The notes below the pieces were generated by a model. It had not been told where the DNA came from, searched no databases, and saw nothing but the letters and a program-made list of their open reading frames with translations. This document shows, in pieces, positions 8,162 to 10,750 of a DNA stretch of 64,000 nt; position 1 is the stretch's first letter; the number at the start of each line of letters is the position of its first letter. A program made the position numbers and the translations under genes. The DNA comes from Iphione sp. A-MEVVRFRX5 (Eukaryota): NCBI GenBank assembly GCA_976226885.1, contig OZ320318.1:38068001-38132000 (forward strand). The letters are read 5' to 3'.

Positions 8162-9754
8162 TTACTCCTTCTTAAAAAACTGGTGGAGTGTTGGCTGCAC
8201 CCTGATCCTTTGGGCCTGGTCTTTCTCAATAATGTTAATAATGTCCATGACAGGGTCCAATGCAGGGGCAATACCCTTGGACAGGCAATACACCCTAACA
8301 TGATCCAGCATGTTGAGGATCTCATGATGATTGTGCTGGCTTCCTGGGATGGGATCATCATCAGCATCATCATCATCACCATCCCTGGATTCCTCATCTG
8401 GTACCTGTAGACCAGCCTTCTCCTTGGCCTCCTCAATGATACGTTGTTCCCACCCCATGTCCTGGGGATCATGAGATGGGCAGCTGGTCATCTCCTCATA
8501 GTCCTCCCTGGTCAGAGCTGTCCCTGGGAGGTGAAGTCCTTCATGTGTCCTTCTGAGGAGCTCTGCCAGGGGGATCTCCTCCTCATCTTCCTCCTCAGGC
8601 TGTGACTGGCTGAGGTCAGCATCACCTGGGTCAGGGGATACTCCTGCCTTCTTGAAGCACTTGAAGACTGTGCTGGCTGGCACAGCCTTCACAGCTGCCT
8701 TCATCCAGGTGATGGCCATGTGGACATCAACACTTTTGATGATCTGCTGGGAGTCTGCTCCACTGTCCAACTTGGCCAGCACATGCCTGAGGACAGCCTT
8801 CTGATAGTGGCTCTTCACCAGTTTGATGATCCCCTGGTCAAGGGGCTGCAGCAGGGAAGTGGTGTTGGCAGGGAGGAATACCAACTTCACATTGGACACC
8901 CTCAGGTGATGGGGGTGTGAAGGGGCATTGTCCAGGATCAATGCCACCTTCCTGCCCTGGGCCTTCATCTTCTTGTTGAAGGCCTGGAGCCACTCCTCAA
9001 AGATTGAAGAGACCATCCAGGCCTTCTTGTTGGACCTCCATGTCACTGGTAAATCATTGAGGTCCAAATTCCTGAAGGCCCTGGGTCTTGCAGCCTTCCC
9101 AATGACCAGGGGCTTCTCAAAGTGTCCAGCCATTGATACACAGAGGGCAAGAGTCAGCCTCTCCTTACTCTTCTTACCCCCAGCTGTGTCACTGCCCTTC
9201 ACAGCAAGGGTTCTGTCTGGGAGGACCCGGAAGAAGAGGCCAGTCTCATCCATGTTGTAGATGTCTTCTTCCTTGTATCCCTCAAGGAGGGTGGGCAGCC
9301 TCTCATGCCACTGCTCCACTGCCCCCTCAGGGACACTGGCCCTCTCTCCAGACAACTTGGCCCCTGAGATGCAGTGTCTCTTCTTGAATCTTGAGAGCCA
9401 TCCCTCAGAGGCAGAGAAGTTATCTATCCCCAGTTCCTTGCTGATGACCTCGGCTCTCTCCCTGATCATTGGTCCTGATACAGGGACCTGGGAATCCCTG
9501 GCTGTCTGAAACCAGGTAAAGATTGTCTCATCCATGAGGGTGAGGTCAGGGGACAGATGCCTTCTCTTGGCCTGAGGGTTGAAGGACCTATCAAAGTCCT
9601 CCATGATGGATGCCTTCCTCTTCAGTATGTTGTGGACTTGGGTCTTGCCTATGTTGAATTGGCTGGCAAGAGTCCTCTGACTTTTACCCTCACTAGCCTG
9701 GATCAGTTTCACCTTCTCAGCAAGACACAGTTCTCTTCTCTTGGGGGAAGACAT
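8162..9754 (-). CDS. pogo/Tigger-family (CENP-B/TIGD-like) transposase, intact, 530 aa
   Basis: N-terminal HTH (EKVKLI...SQRTLASQFNIGKTQVHNILK), second HTH (FTWFQ...GPMIRERA...FSASEGWLSRFKKRH), DDD motifs YNMDETG / LDNAPSH / QPLDQGII, an acidic tract, and a C-terminal PIP-box-like QPTLHQFF. Confidence 0.96.
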   Translation of the reverse strand: MSSPKRRELCLAEKVKLIQASEGKSQRTLASQFNIGKTQVHNILKRKASIMEDFDRSFNPQAKRRHLSPDLTLMDETIFTWFQTARDSQVPVSGPMIRERAEVISKELGIDNFSASEGWLSRFKKRHCISGAKLSGERASVPEGAVEQWHERLPTLLEGYKEEDIYNMDETGLFFRVLPDRTLAVKGSDTAGGKKSKERLTLALCVSMAGHFEKPLVIGKAARPRAFRNLDLNDLPVTWRSNKKAWMVSSIFEEWLQAFNKKMKAQGRKVALILDNAPSHPHHLRVSNVKLVFLPANTTSLLQPLDQGIIKLVKSHYQKAVLRHVLAKLDSGADSQQIIKSVDVHMAITWMKAAVKAVPASTVFKCFKKAGVSPDPGDADLSQSQPEEEDEEEIPLAELLRRTHEGLHLPGTALTREDYEEMTSCPSHDPQDMGWEQRIIEEAKEKAGLQVPDEESRDGDDDDADDDPIPGSQHNHHEILNMLDHVRVYCLSKGIAPALDPVMDIINIIEKDQAQRIRVQPTLHQFFKKE

Positions 9755-9756
9755 CT

Positions 9757-10080
9757 TGAAGTGCTGGAGTGGTGGGCAGAAGTGCTGGAGTGGTCGGCAG
9801 AAGTGCTGGAGTGATCGGCAGATGTGACGGCGCAGCCGGCAGAAGGTCTGGAGCAGTCGGCAGAAGTGCTGGAGTGGTGGGCAGAAGTGCTGGAGTGGTC
9901 GGCAGACGTGACGGCGCGGTCGGCAGAAGGTCTGGAGTGGTGGGCAGAAGTGCTGGAGTGGTCGGCAGACGTGACGGCGCGGTCGGCAGAAGGTCTGGAG
10001 TGGTGGGCAGAAGTGCTGGAGTGATCGGCAGACGTGACGGCGCGGTCGGCAGAAGGTCTGGAGTGGTCGGCAGAAGGGTT
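9757..10080. repeat. 21-bp tandem array (about 15 copies) with 63-bp higher-order units, abutting the transposase ATG
   Basis: Monomer variants cagaagtgctggagtggtggg, cagaagtgctggagtg(g/a)tcgg, cagacgtgacggcgcggtcgg and cagaaggtctggagtggtggg recur in ordered trimers. Confidence 0.93.
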
Positions 10081-10082
10081 GT

Positions 10083-10116
10083 GAATGATTGAGGGGGTCA
10101 GCTGTGTTGCCTTATA
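10083..10116 (-). promoter_or_regulatory. Putative core promoter of the pogo transposase (TATA + Inr)
   Basis: Minus-strand TATAAG begins at 10116 and TCATTC (TCAKTY consensus) has its A at 10086, exactly 30 nt downstream. There is no minus-strand ATG between 10086 and the transposase start, which has A at -3. Confidence 0.6.
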
Positions 10117-10128
10117 TCCCCGAGGGGA

Positions 10129-10750
10129 CCGGGGCCGGTGGTCGCCGCGGAGACCCTCAGACAAGCACGACAGGAGTTCCTCTAGGGTCGCTTCCCCTCA
10201 AATTGGCGGGTATCAGGGCTGGTGGTCGCCGACGGTCGCCGCGGAGACCCTCAGACAAGCACGACAGGAGTTCCTCTAGGGTCGCTTCCACCCAAATTGG
10301 CGGGTATCAGGGCTGGTGGTCGCCGACGGTCGCCTCGGATACCCTCAGACAAGCACGACAGGAGTTCCTCTAGGGTCGCTTCCCCTCAAATTGGCGGGTA
10401 TCAGGGCTGGTGCTCGCCGACGGTCGCCCCGGTTACCCTCAGACAAGCACGACAGGAGTTCCTCAAGGGTCGTTTTCATAGTGATTTTGGGGTATCGGGG
10501 CTGGTGTTCGCCGACGGTCGCCCCGGTTACCCTCAGACAAGCACGACAGGAGTTCCTCTAGGGTCGCTTCCACTCAAATTGGCGGGTATCAGGGCTGGTG
10601 TTCGCCGACGGTCGCCCCGGTTACCCTCAGACAAGCACGACAGGAGTTCCTCAAGGGTCGTTTTCATAGTGATTTTGGGGTATCGGGGCTGGTGTTCGCC
10701 GACGGTCGCCCCGGTTACCCTCAGACAAGCACGACAGTCGCCTCGGATAC
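10129..10750. repeat. 94-bp CpG-rich tandem array (about 6.5 copies) with two unit variants
   Basis: cagacaagcacgacag recurs at 10158, 10252, 10346, 10440, 10534, 10628 and 10722 (exact 94-bp period). Variant order is A,A,A,B,A,B. Confidence 0.95.

What the first reader, a model, noticed from the sequence alone, without database searches (positions are those of the whole stretch)
8162..10750. pogo element pairing a nearly CpG-free ORF with a self-carried CpG-island promoter made of tandem repeats
Seen: I count 3 CpG in the 1593-bp ORF, where roughly 100 are expected at about 52% GC. The adjacent 94-bp units carry up to about 9 CpG each, and the 21-bp array is also CpG-rich. The ORF is intact, and the decayed relative at 41-42.5 kb is similarly depleted (about 5 CpG), so the trait is a family property. 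Known: 5mC deamination depletes CpG, and unmethylated CpG-dense promoters resist silencing. Inference: the element may evade host methylation by presenting no targets in its body while carrying a renewable CpG island. Alternatives are long residence in methylated gene bodies or horizontal transfer from a heavily methylated genome.
Basis: partly seen in the sequence, partly recalled or inferred. Interest (0 to 1): 0.72.

Follow-up and report, generated by a model that had tools for sequence, protein, structure and literature searches.

The report
Active pogo transposon with CpG-free gene
A young, still-mobile pogo/Tigger jumping gene in an animal genome has lost almost every CpG from its transposase gene but keeps a CpG-dense, repeat-built 5' control region. 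Copy comparisons suggest this comes from methylation-type CpG decay balanced by selection, and give no sign that the element escapes methylation.

Summary
The 1593-bp ORF (window 8162-9754, minus strand) has 3 CpG against 111 expected (o/e 0.027). The upstream arrays have o/e about 0.95.

The real unit is a 3352-bp autonomous pogo/Tigger element at 7630-10981. It has TA duplications, CAGGRGACTCC inverted ends and a DDD transposase. A 99.6% identical copy lies on another chromosome, and 26 of 30 sampled ORFs are intact.

All 28 full copies share the same split: 5' region o/e 0.60-0.91, ORF 0.02-0.04. A TATA box and initiator, conserved in all 29 copies, lie in the unique linker between the arrays. 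So the 94-bp array is upstream promoter DNA and the 21-bp array is the 5' leader.

Other intact transposon ORFs in this genome (0.21-0.59) and 735 background windows (minimum 0.14) are far less depleted. The nearest relatives in other organisms have o/e 0.36-0.70.

CpGs of the 5' region are hypermutable in individual copies (5-13 fold) but conserved between subfamilies. The island also decays with copy age. A rough mutational equilibrium predicts 3-9 CpG in the ORF; 3 are seen.

Best reading: methylation-driven decay plus lineage selection. Adaptive evasion is not shown. Other first readers of this scan noted the same trait elsewhere in this genome.

The parts
7628..7629 (.). TA target-site duplication, left
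   Evidence: Read directly. TA/TA flanks 28 of 28 full-length copies.
7630..7640 (+). Terminal inverted repeat CAGGGGACTCC (the 3' end relative to the gene)
   Evidence: Copies on other chromosomes stop aligning here.
7641..7806 (-). 3' subterminal region with the palindrome GGCGACCAGTCGCC at 7686-7699 and a CT-rich tract. All six 3'-side CpGs lie in the last 72 bp of the element (7641-7697).
7807..8013 (-). 31-bp AT-rich tandem array (6.5 units), CpG-free. Unit number varies from 4 to 11.5 between copies.
8098..8103 (-). AATAAA polyadenylation signal, 59 nt after the stop codon
   Evidence: The surrounding 18-mer is kept in 27 of 29 copies.
8162..9754 (-). Transposase ORF, 530 aa: CENP-B_N + HTH_Tnp_Tc5 + DDE_1, with triad D169/D275/D306. 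CpG o/e 0.027.
9758..10076 (-). 21-bp (63-bp higher-order) tandem array, 15 units, 25 CpG. Predicted 5' leader with no upstream ATG.
10083..10088 (-). Initiator-like TCATTC; predicted transcription start at 10086
   Evidence: fixed spacing, 30 nt from the first T of the TATA box to A+1, in 29 of 29 copies. Inferred from sequence, not measured.
10111..10116 (-). TATA box (TATAAG) in the unique 63-bp linker 10077-10139
   Evidence: exactly one per copy in all 29 copies, although the flanking sequence differs between subfamilies.
10140..10737 (-). 94-bp (188-bp higher-order) tandem array, 6.4 units, 8-9 CpG per unit. Carries sense CCAAT boxes and GGCGACC half-sites.
10738..10970 (-). 5' subterminal region with GGCGACCAGTCGCC-type motifs at 10773, 10836, 10935 and 10952
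   Evidence: 8 matches in the window against 0.07 expected.
10971..10981 (-). Terminal inverted repeat CAGGAGACTCC (the 5' end relative to the gene)
10982..10983 (.). TA target-site duplication, right
41051..42844 (+). Old, 5'-truncated, frame-broken copy of the same family. It is 83.5% identical over the ORF, has 5 CpG, and keeps one subterminal motif at 42831-42844.

Best explanation
This is an autonomous, recently active pogo/Tigger DNA transposon laid out like a small gene. In gene orientation it reads: end repeat; subterminal GGCGACCAGTCGCC motifs; an upstream array of 94-bp units (CCAAT boxes plus GGCGACC half-sites); a unique linker with a TATA box and initiator; a leader made of 21-bp repeats; the transposase ORF; AATAAA; a 31-bp array; and the other end.

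The CpG pattern is best read as a mutation-selection balance. Copies of this family suffer methylation-type CpG hypermutation in a genome that has DNMT1. Where CpGs are dispensable (ORF, 3' UTR, 3' array), the lineage has been driven to the mutational floor. In the 5' control region and the termini, CpGs persist in the lineages that keep transposing. That could be because active copies keep this region unmethylated, as a gene promoter does, or because the CpGs sit in required binding motifs. Silenced resident copies lose these CpGs with age.

Shown here: the anatomy, the depletion, CpG hypermutability in copies, and CpG conservation between subfamilies. Inferred: that the cause is 5mC, where transcription starts, and the epigenetic split in active copies. 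One consequence is that the ORF can hardly be methylated and is roughly three times less mutable. Whether that is an adaptation is open.
For: Element identity and recent activity: Pfam domains; DDD triad; TA/TA duplications in 28/28 copies; a 99.6% identical copy on another chromosome and more than 2500 candidates; 26/30 ORFs intact; pN/pS about 0.2.

Deamination signature: TpG 1.43, CpA 1.48.

Depletion is regional, not codon-bound: 0 against 15 expected CpG in 464 bp of non-coding 3' sequence, while the predicted 5' leader keeps 25 CpG.

CpG hypermutability in copies: private transitions at 11/24 CpG sites against 9/97 other C/G sites in the unique 5' region (P = 1e-4) and against 3.6% of ORF C/G sites (13-fold); nearest-neighbour pairs 24/699 against 14/2154 (P = 4e-7).

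Island decay with copy age: rho -0.63, P = 3e-4.

CpG conservation on propagating lineages: shared transitions at 1/24 CpG sites against 22/97 other C/G sites (P = 0.04); shared CpG-destroying events 2 against 12.7 expected in the same region.

Equilibrium estimate: 3.3 to 8.6 CpG against 3 observed.

DNMT1 (RFD plus methylase exons) is present in the genome.

The state is derived in this lineage: relatives at 49% identity have ORF o/e 0.36-0.70.

Published methylomes of oyster and cnidarians show young repeats methylated and methylation rising after the TSS (PMC4378273, PMC8857917).
Against: Methylation was never measured; no sequencing run was listed. Ten intact retrotransposon ORFs in the same genome are far less depleted (0.21-0.59), so something specific to this family is unexplained. 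Conserved Arg positions are AGR in 9 of 10 cases, whereas a CpG-poor relative (L044) still keeps 19 CGN codons. Deamination under purifying selection should spare such codons, so extra selection against CpG may act. Substitutions shared by subfamilies create CpG less often than expected (2 against 8, P = 0.009). GC3 of 64% shows that synonymous sites are not simply at the genome's neutral composition. Rates come from only 30 copies, biased towards the best matches, and array alignment inflates some 5' differences.
Confidence: 0.58

Rival explanations
1. Adaptive evasion. Selection has removed CpG from the body so that it cannot be methylated, silenced or mutated. The CpG-dense repeat arrays act as a promoter that stays unmethylated and can be regenerated by array turnover.
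For: Arg is recoded to AGR at 9/10 conserved positions. Subfamily-level substitutions avoid creating CpG: 2 against 8 expected, and 0 of 35 shared synonymous changes. Other young transposon ORFs are not depleted like this. The youngest copies have an undepleted island (o/e 0.90-0.91). Array unit length and number turn over between subfamilies.
Against: A neutral equilibrium from the family's own rates already gives 3-9 CpG. The island is hypermutable and decays in resident copies, so it is not immune to methylation. The non-coding 3' part is equally CpG-free. There is no expression or methylation data.
Confidence: 0.25
2. Horizontal transfer. The ORF composition was inherited from a donor genome with very strong CpG suppression.
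For: The ORF has GC 53% and GC3 64%, against 35-40% GC in other transposon ORFs of this genome. No relative above about 51% protein identity was found.
Against: The same element carries an undepleted 1.2-kb 5' region. An 83.5% identical decayed copy shows long residence. Subfamilies with pS up to 0.088 all keep 2-4 CpG. Relatives have similar GC (about 51%) but normal CpG.
Confidence: 0.06
3. RNA-level or translational cause: avoidance of CpG in the mRNA (a ZAP-like sensor) or a codon-usage effect.
For: Depletion is complete in all three codon contexts.
Against: The predicted 332-nt 5' leader of the same transcript has 25 CpG (o/e 0.97). The depletion also continues about 380 bp beyond the polyadenylation signal.
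Confidence: 0.04
4. A domesticated, host-serving pogo-derived gene with an ordinary CpG-island promoter.
For: Intact ORF under purifying selection and a gene-like promoter layout.
Against: Thousands of candidate copies. Intact inverted ends and TA duplications in 28/28 copies. Near-identical copies on different chromosomes. Here it is inserted inside a decayed piggyBac.
Confidence: 0.01

Closest known systems
pogo (Drosophila) / Tigger (human) elements, Tc1/mariner superfamily
   Same: CENP-B-type HTH domains plus a DDE_1 catalytic domain with a DDD triad, TA duplication, short inverted ends starting CAGG, and subterminal repeated motifs.
   Different: Three internal tandem arrays in a fixed layout, a 1.2-kb CpG-island 5' region, and an ORF almost free of CpG. 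The nearest protein found is only 49-51% identical.
Mouse L1Md 5' UTR monomer arrays (PMC6454616, PMC2894050, PMC10620060)
   Same: A transposon carries its own CpG-rich promoter region built of tandem units whose number varies between copies. Methylation-linked loss of promoter CpGs with copy age is also described there.
   Different: That is a retrotransposon in which each monomer is a promoter unit. Here the conserved TATA + initiator lies in a unique linker between two arrays, and promoter activity is untested.
Invertebrate gene-body methylation and the low-CpG-o/e gene class (PMC4378273, PMC8857917)
   Same: CpG is kept around the start site and lost from the transcribed body. Young repeats are methylation targets. 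DNMT1 is present.
   Different: Magnitude: o/e is 0.03 here. From general knowledge, methylated host genes of invertebrates are usually near 0.3-0.5. Host genes of this genome could not be sampled.
Plant anti-silencing and transposase-regulator systems (VANDAL/VANC targets, PMC10398659; transposases as activators, bioRxiv 10.64898/2026.08.24.746577; maize Spm/Ac CpG-rich 5' regions, from memory)
   Same: Fast-diverging non-coding tandem repeats that carry a short protein-binding word. Here GGCGACC, the half-site of the terminal palindrome, is the most consistently enriched 7-mer of the upstream array.
   Different: Binding by the pogo transposase and any effect on silencing are untested. The host is an animal and the superfamily is different.
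CpG-suppressed viral genomes and synthetic CpG-free transgenes (from memory)
   Same: Near-zero CpG with Arg encoded by AGR.
   Different: In those cases the pressure acts on RNA or on vector silencing. Here the leader RNA stays CpG-rich.

Membership tests
pogo/Tigger transposons | N-terminal CENP-B-type HTH DNA-binding domains | tested here: met
   CENP-B_N E = 2.7e-7 and HTH_Tnp_Tc5 E = 2e-16.
pogo/Tigger transposons | DDE_1 catalytic domain with an intact acidic triad | tested here: met
   DDE_1 E = 8.7e-43 over the full profile. D169, D275 and D306 are invariant in 10 aligned proteins, with DD30D spacing.
pogo/Tigger transposons | TA target-site duplication and terminal inverted repeats | tested here: met
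   TA/TA in 28/28 copies. CAGGRGACTCC at both ends.
pogo/Tigger transposons | Mobility (dispersed near-identical copies) | tested here: met
   A 99.6% identical copy on another chromosome; 26/30 ORFs intact. Excision or insertion was not observed directly.
CpG island (composition criteria: over 200 bp, GC over 50%, o/e over 0.6) | Length, GC and o/e thresholds | tested here: met
   9796-10981: 1186 bp, GC 60%, 95 CpG, o/e 0.91. o/e is 0.60-0.91 in 28 copies.
CpG-island promoter | Transcription starts inside the island | tested here: inconclusive
   A conserved TATAAG and a TCATTC initiator at canonical spacing in 29/29 copies predict a start at 10086. No RNA data.
CpG-island promoter | Unmethylated in the germ line | not testable with these tools
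   Indirect evidence goes against it for resident copies: CpG hypermutability and decay with age. Active copies may differ.
Tandem-unit promoter of the mouse L1 monomer type | Each repeat unit carries promoter activity | tested here: inconclusive
   The only TATA + initiator pair is in the unique linker, not in the units. The units carry CCAAT boxes. No activity assay.
Methylation-driven CpG decay | TpG/CpA excess, CpG sites hypermutable by transitions, methyltransferase present | tested here: met
   TpG 1.43 and CpA 1.48; 5-13 fold excess of private CpG transitions; DNMT1 locus present. 5mC itself was not measured.

The most novel reading that the evidence does not exclude
The family has evolved a two-part answer to methylation-based genome defence in an invertebrate. 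The first part is a transposase gene kept CpG-free by lineage-level selection, including recoding of conserved arginines, so that it can be neither methylated nor hit by methylation-driven mutation. The second part is a CpG-dense promoter region built of arrays of the transposase's own binding half-site (GGCGACC). Through these the transposase would keep its promoter active or unmethylated, in the manner of plant VANC/TnpA systems.
Probability: 0.2. Interest if true: 0.8.

Novelty: new variant of a known kind. Interest (0 to 1): 0.5.

Why it matters
Whether DNA methylation defends invertebrate genomes against transposons, and how transposons respond, is still debated. This family offers a clean natural test case. 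It has thousands of dated copies, a gene with essentially no methylatable sites, and next to it a 1.2-kb island whose CpGs can be followed as they decay.

If the split reflects gene-like partitioning (open promoter, methylated body), transposons can be shaped by the same rules as host genes, and to an extreme degree. If selection against CpG is involved, this would be a natural counterpart of engineered CpG-free transgenes, and an example of selection for mutational robustness in a selfish element.

Tried and rejected
1. Public reads for expression or methylation: none was listed.
The background therefore rests on the window, the flanks of 29 copies and 10 RT loci (167 kb).
3. Translation of the 21-bp array as an N-terminal extension: the frame is open, but no in-frame upstream ATG exists in 20 of the 21 copies that could be scored. 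The array is also open in several frames, so this was rejected.
4. A first, crude test of CpG-creating changes (5 against 21.5 expected) overstated the deficit. After stratifying by mutation type it is 5 against 13, and private changes are as expected (3 against 5).
5. Short CpG-poor stretches at window 3801-4500 and 5001-6000 were checked for coding potential: none was found.
6. Literature searches for a described CpG-free transposase ORF found nothing relevant. Absence from this paper library is not proof of novelty.
7. The organism could not be named. It is an animal with a 1.18-Gb genome. The nearest proteins come from marine metagenomes and marine invertebrates.
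Full report
**1. Observation.**
The ORF at window 8162-9754 (minus strand, 530 aa) has 3 CpG where base composition predicts 110.9 (GC 52.9%, o/e 0.027). TpG (1.43) and CpA (1.48) are in excess.

The depletion is complete in every codon context:
- Arg is encoded 30 times by AGR and twice by CGN.
- There is no NCG codon.
- A C|G junction between codons occurs once against 54 expected.
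- GC3 is 64%.
- Permuting synonymous codons within the same protein and codon usage gives 48 +/- 4 CpG.

The 21/63-bp array (9758-10076) and the 94-bp array (10140-10737) have o/e 0.96 and 0.93-0.95, with 8-9 CpG per 94-bp unit. The decayed copy at 41051-42533 has 5 CpG against 91.5 expected.

**2. What the thing is.**
Pfam finds CENP-B_N, HTH_Tnp_Tc5 and a full-length DDE_1 domain. In an alignment with nine homologues, D169, D275 and D306 are invariant.

A search of the window's own 1.18-Gb genome gave more than 2500 candidates. One copy on another chromosome is 99.6% identical over 3179 bp. Copy ends define the element as 7630-10981 (3352 bp). It ends in CAGGGGACTCC / CAGGAGACTCC and is flanked by TA on both sides. 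TA/TA flanks 28 of 28 full copies.

The element sits inside a decayed piggyBac, whose transposase reading frames continue on both flanks. Of 30 sampled ORFs, 26 are intact and all their indels are multiples of three. Between copies pN/pS is about 0.2, and pS reaches 0.088. This is an autonomous family with several subfamilies and very recent activity. It is not a domesticated gene.

**3. Anatomy in gene orientation.**
- The 5' end repeat is followed by about 240 bp holding four GGCGACCAGTCGCC-type palindromes. The window has 8 such matches against 0.07 expected, all in this family.
- Next comes the 94-bp array.
- Then a unique 63-bp linker.
- Then the 21-bp array.
- Then the ATG.

In all 29 copies the 5' region has exactly one TATAAG. 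It is followed by TCATTC, with 30 nt from the first T of the TATA box to A+1 of the initiator. The sequence around and between the two motifs differs between subfamilies. This is the canonical TATA-initiator geometry (established knowledge) and predicts a transcription start at about 10086.

The 21-bp array would then be a 332-nt leader. It has no ATG in any frame, and the last upstream ATG lies 283-946 nt before the start codon in every copy scored. The 94-bp (or 84/64-bp) array would lie directly upstream. It carries sense CCAAT boxes, the nearest usually 68-93 bp before the TATA box. It also carries GGCGACC, the half-site of the terminal palindrome. GGCGACC is the most consistently enriched 7-mer of this array across subfamilies.

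AATAAA lies 59 nt after the stop codon and is conserved. A third array (31-33 bp, AT-rich) lies beyond it. All copies keep this three-array layout, although unit length and number vary. Relatives at 49% identity from marine metagenomes also have short CpG-bearing arrays just upstream of the ORF.

**4. Extent of the CpG split.**
In gene orientation, 96 CpGs lie in positions 1-1186 and three in the ORF. None follows until the last 72 bp of the element. The CpG-free zone (7698-9795) has 3 CpG against 127 expected. Its 464 non-coding bases have 0 against 15 expected (Poisson 3e-7). The predicted leader has 25 against 25.8 expected.

So the boundary does not follow the coding sequence or the predicted RNA. 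This argues against a codon-level or RNA-sensor cause. All 28 full copies show the split: 5' region 0.60-0.91, ORF 0.02-0.04, 3' part 0.14-0.37.

**5. Is it more than background?**
- Ten loci with intact reverse-transcriptase ORFs from the same genome have ORF o/e 0.21-0.59.
- In 167 kb of non-family sequence, 735 windows of ORF length have a minimum o/e of 0.139 and a median of 0.587. None with GC >= 0.48 is below 0.61.
- ORFs of the nearest relatives elsewhere have o/e 0.70, 0.66 and 0.36.

**6. Mechanism tests from the copies.**

(a) Unique 5' subterminal region. Private C>T/G>A changes occur at 11 of 24 CpG sites, against 9 of 97 other C/G sites (odds ratio 8.3, P = 1e-4) and against 3.6% of ORF C/G sites. 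Changes shared by several copies show the opposite pattern: 1/24 against 22/97.

(b) Four nearest-neighbour copy pairs. 5' CpG sites differ by transitions at 24/699, against 14/2154 for other 5' C/G sites (P = 4e-7). ORF non-CpG sites differ at 8/6372.

(c) The 5' CpG o/e falls with the number of private ORF mutations of a copy (rho -0.63, P = 3e-4).

Together these show that CpGs of the island are hypermutable after insertion. The transition bias is that expected of 5mC deamination, and the genome has a DNMT1 gene. These CpGs are nevertheless retained on the lineages that go on transposing.

(d) With the family's own private rates (A/T transitions 1.06%, C/G 3.6%, CpG 46%), the balance between CpG creation from the 287 TpG/CpA sites and CpG loss predicts 3.3 CpG in the ORF. 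It predicts 8.6 if hypermutability is only five-fold. Three are observed.

Mutation pressure alone can therefore account for the floor, given long exposure. The 83.5% identical dead copy and the roughly 50% protein distance to any relative leave ample time.

**7. What this does not explain.**
- At ten positions where all four compared proteins have Arg, this ORF uses AGR nine times. The relatives use CGN for 45-78% of all their Arg codons. One relative in a CpG-poor genome has lost synonymous CpGs but keeps 19 CGN codons.
- Deamination at a constrained Arg codon gives a missense or stop change, which selection removes. So the near-complete recoding suggests an added filter against CpG.
- A plausible filter, by inference, is lineage selection. 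Each CpG in an essential codon is a 5-13-fold hotspot for inactivation, and a CpG-free ORF lowers the total mutation input by roughly a factor of three.
- Substitutions shared between subfamilies create CpG less often than expected (2 against 8, P = 0.009). Private ones do not (3 against 5).
- It also remains open why the LINE ORFs of the same genome are much less depleted.

**8. Verdict on the interpretation.**
The self-carried CpG island around a promoter is plausible. It is now anchored by a conserved core promoter, which lies between the arrays rather than in them. The claim that the element evades methylation is not supported, because resident copies show the mutational footprint of methylation on the island. 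Adaptive removal of CpG remains a live minority reading. Horizontal transfer and RNA-level causes are unlikely.

**9. Comparison with known systems.**
By every defining feature tested, the element is a member of the pogo/Tigger group.
- Its repeat-built, CpG-rich 5' region resembles mouse L1 monomer promoters, including loss of promoter CpGs with age (PMC6454616, PMC10620060).
- The CpG partition resembles invertebrate gene-body methylation, where young repeats are also targets (PMC4378273, PMC8857917).
- The arrays of a terminal-motif half-site recall plant VANC/TnpA target repeats (PMC10398659; bioRxiv 10.64898/2026.08.24.746577).
- I found no paper describing an active transposase gene with essentially no CpG next to its own CpG island.

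**10. Earlier notes of this scan.**
Other first readers flagged the same trait in other parts of this genome: s1-349352 and s1-317955, both 1596-letter ORFs and likely this family; s1-313941; and s1-323603. These are unchecked leads. They suggest the trait may extend to other transposons here.

Noticed in passing
window 7043-7597 and 10985-12565 (minus strand): The pogo element is inserted into a decayed piggyBac. DDE_Tnp_1_7 fragments lie on the right flank. On the left flank are piggyBac-like frames (MGGVD motif, Cys-rich C-terminus).
   Followed up: partly
window 7807-8013; all copies: A third, AT-rich and CpG-free 31-33-bp array lies downstream of the poly(A) signal. Its unit number differs even between near-identical copies (6.5 against 8.5 in the window copy and L002). 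Its function is unknown.
   Followed up: partly
L027 and L029 (G000:C2:101.9 Mb, C15:33.56 Mb): In two copies most of the upstream 84-bp array is inverted (GGTCGCC and ATTGG orientation), while the TATA box, leader and ORF are unchanged.
   Followed up: no
window 3801-4500 and 5001-6000: Short CpG-poor stretches (o/e 0-0.1) outside the pogo family with no evident coding potential. The cause is unknown.
   Followed up: partly
genome G000: Very transposon-rich genome. There are 38,547 first-look candidates for RVT_1, many with open frames of 900-1380 aa, and 3,156 for DDE_1, many with open frames of 500-630 aa from several pogo families.
   Followed up: no
G000:C15:82903184-82922497: A single DNMT1-like locus (RFD exon plus methylase exons). 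No DNMT3-type hit appeared in the six-frame search, but that does not show absence.
   Followed up: no
L041 5-109; L045 123-174: The nearest relatives (49% identity, marine metagenome contigs) also carry short CpG-bearing tandem arrays (27 bp x 3.9; 17 bp x 3.1) just upstream of the transposase ORF. The array-in-leader layout is therefore older than the CpG-free ORF.
   Followed up: partly
all copies, 5' and 3' subterminal regions: Non-coding ends differ by up to 19% between subfamilies whose ORFs differ by 3% or less, while the GGCGACCAGTCGCC motifs are kept. This is fast turnover of non-coding DNA around conserved motifs.
   Followed up: partly
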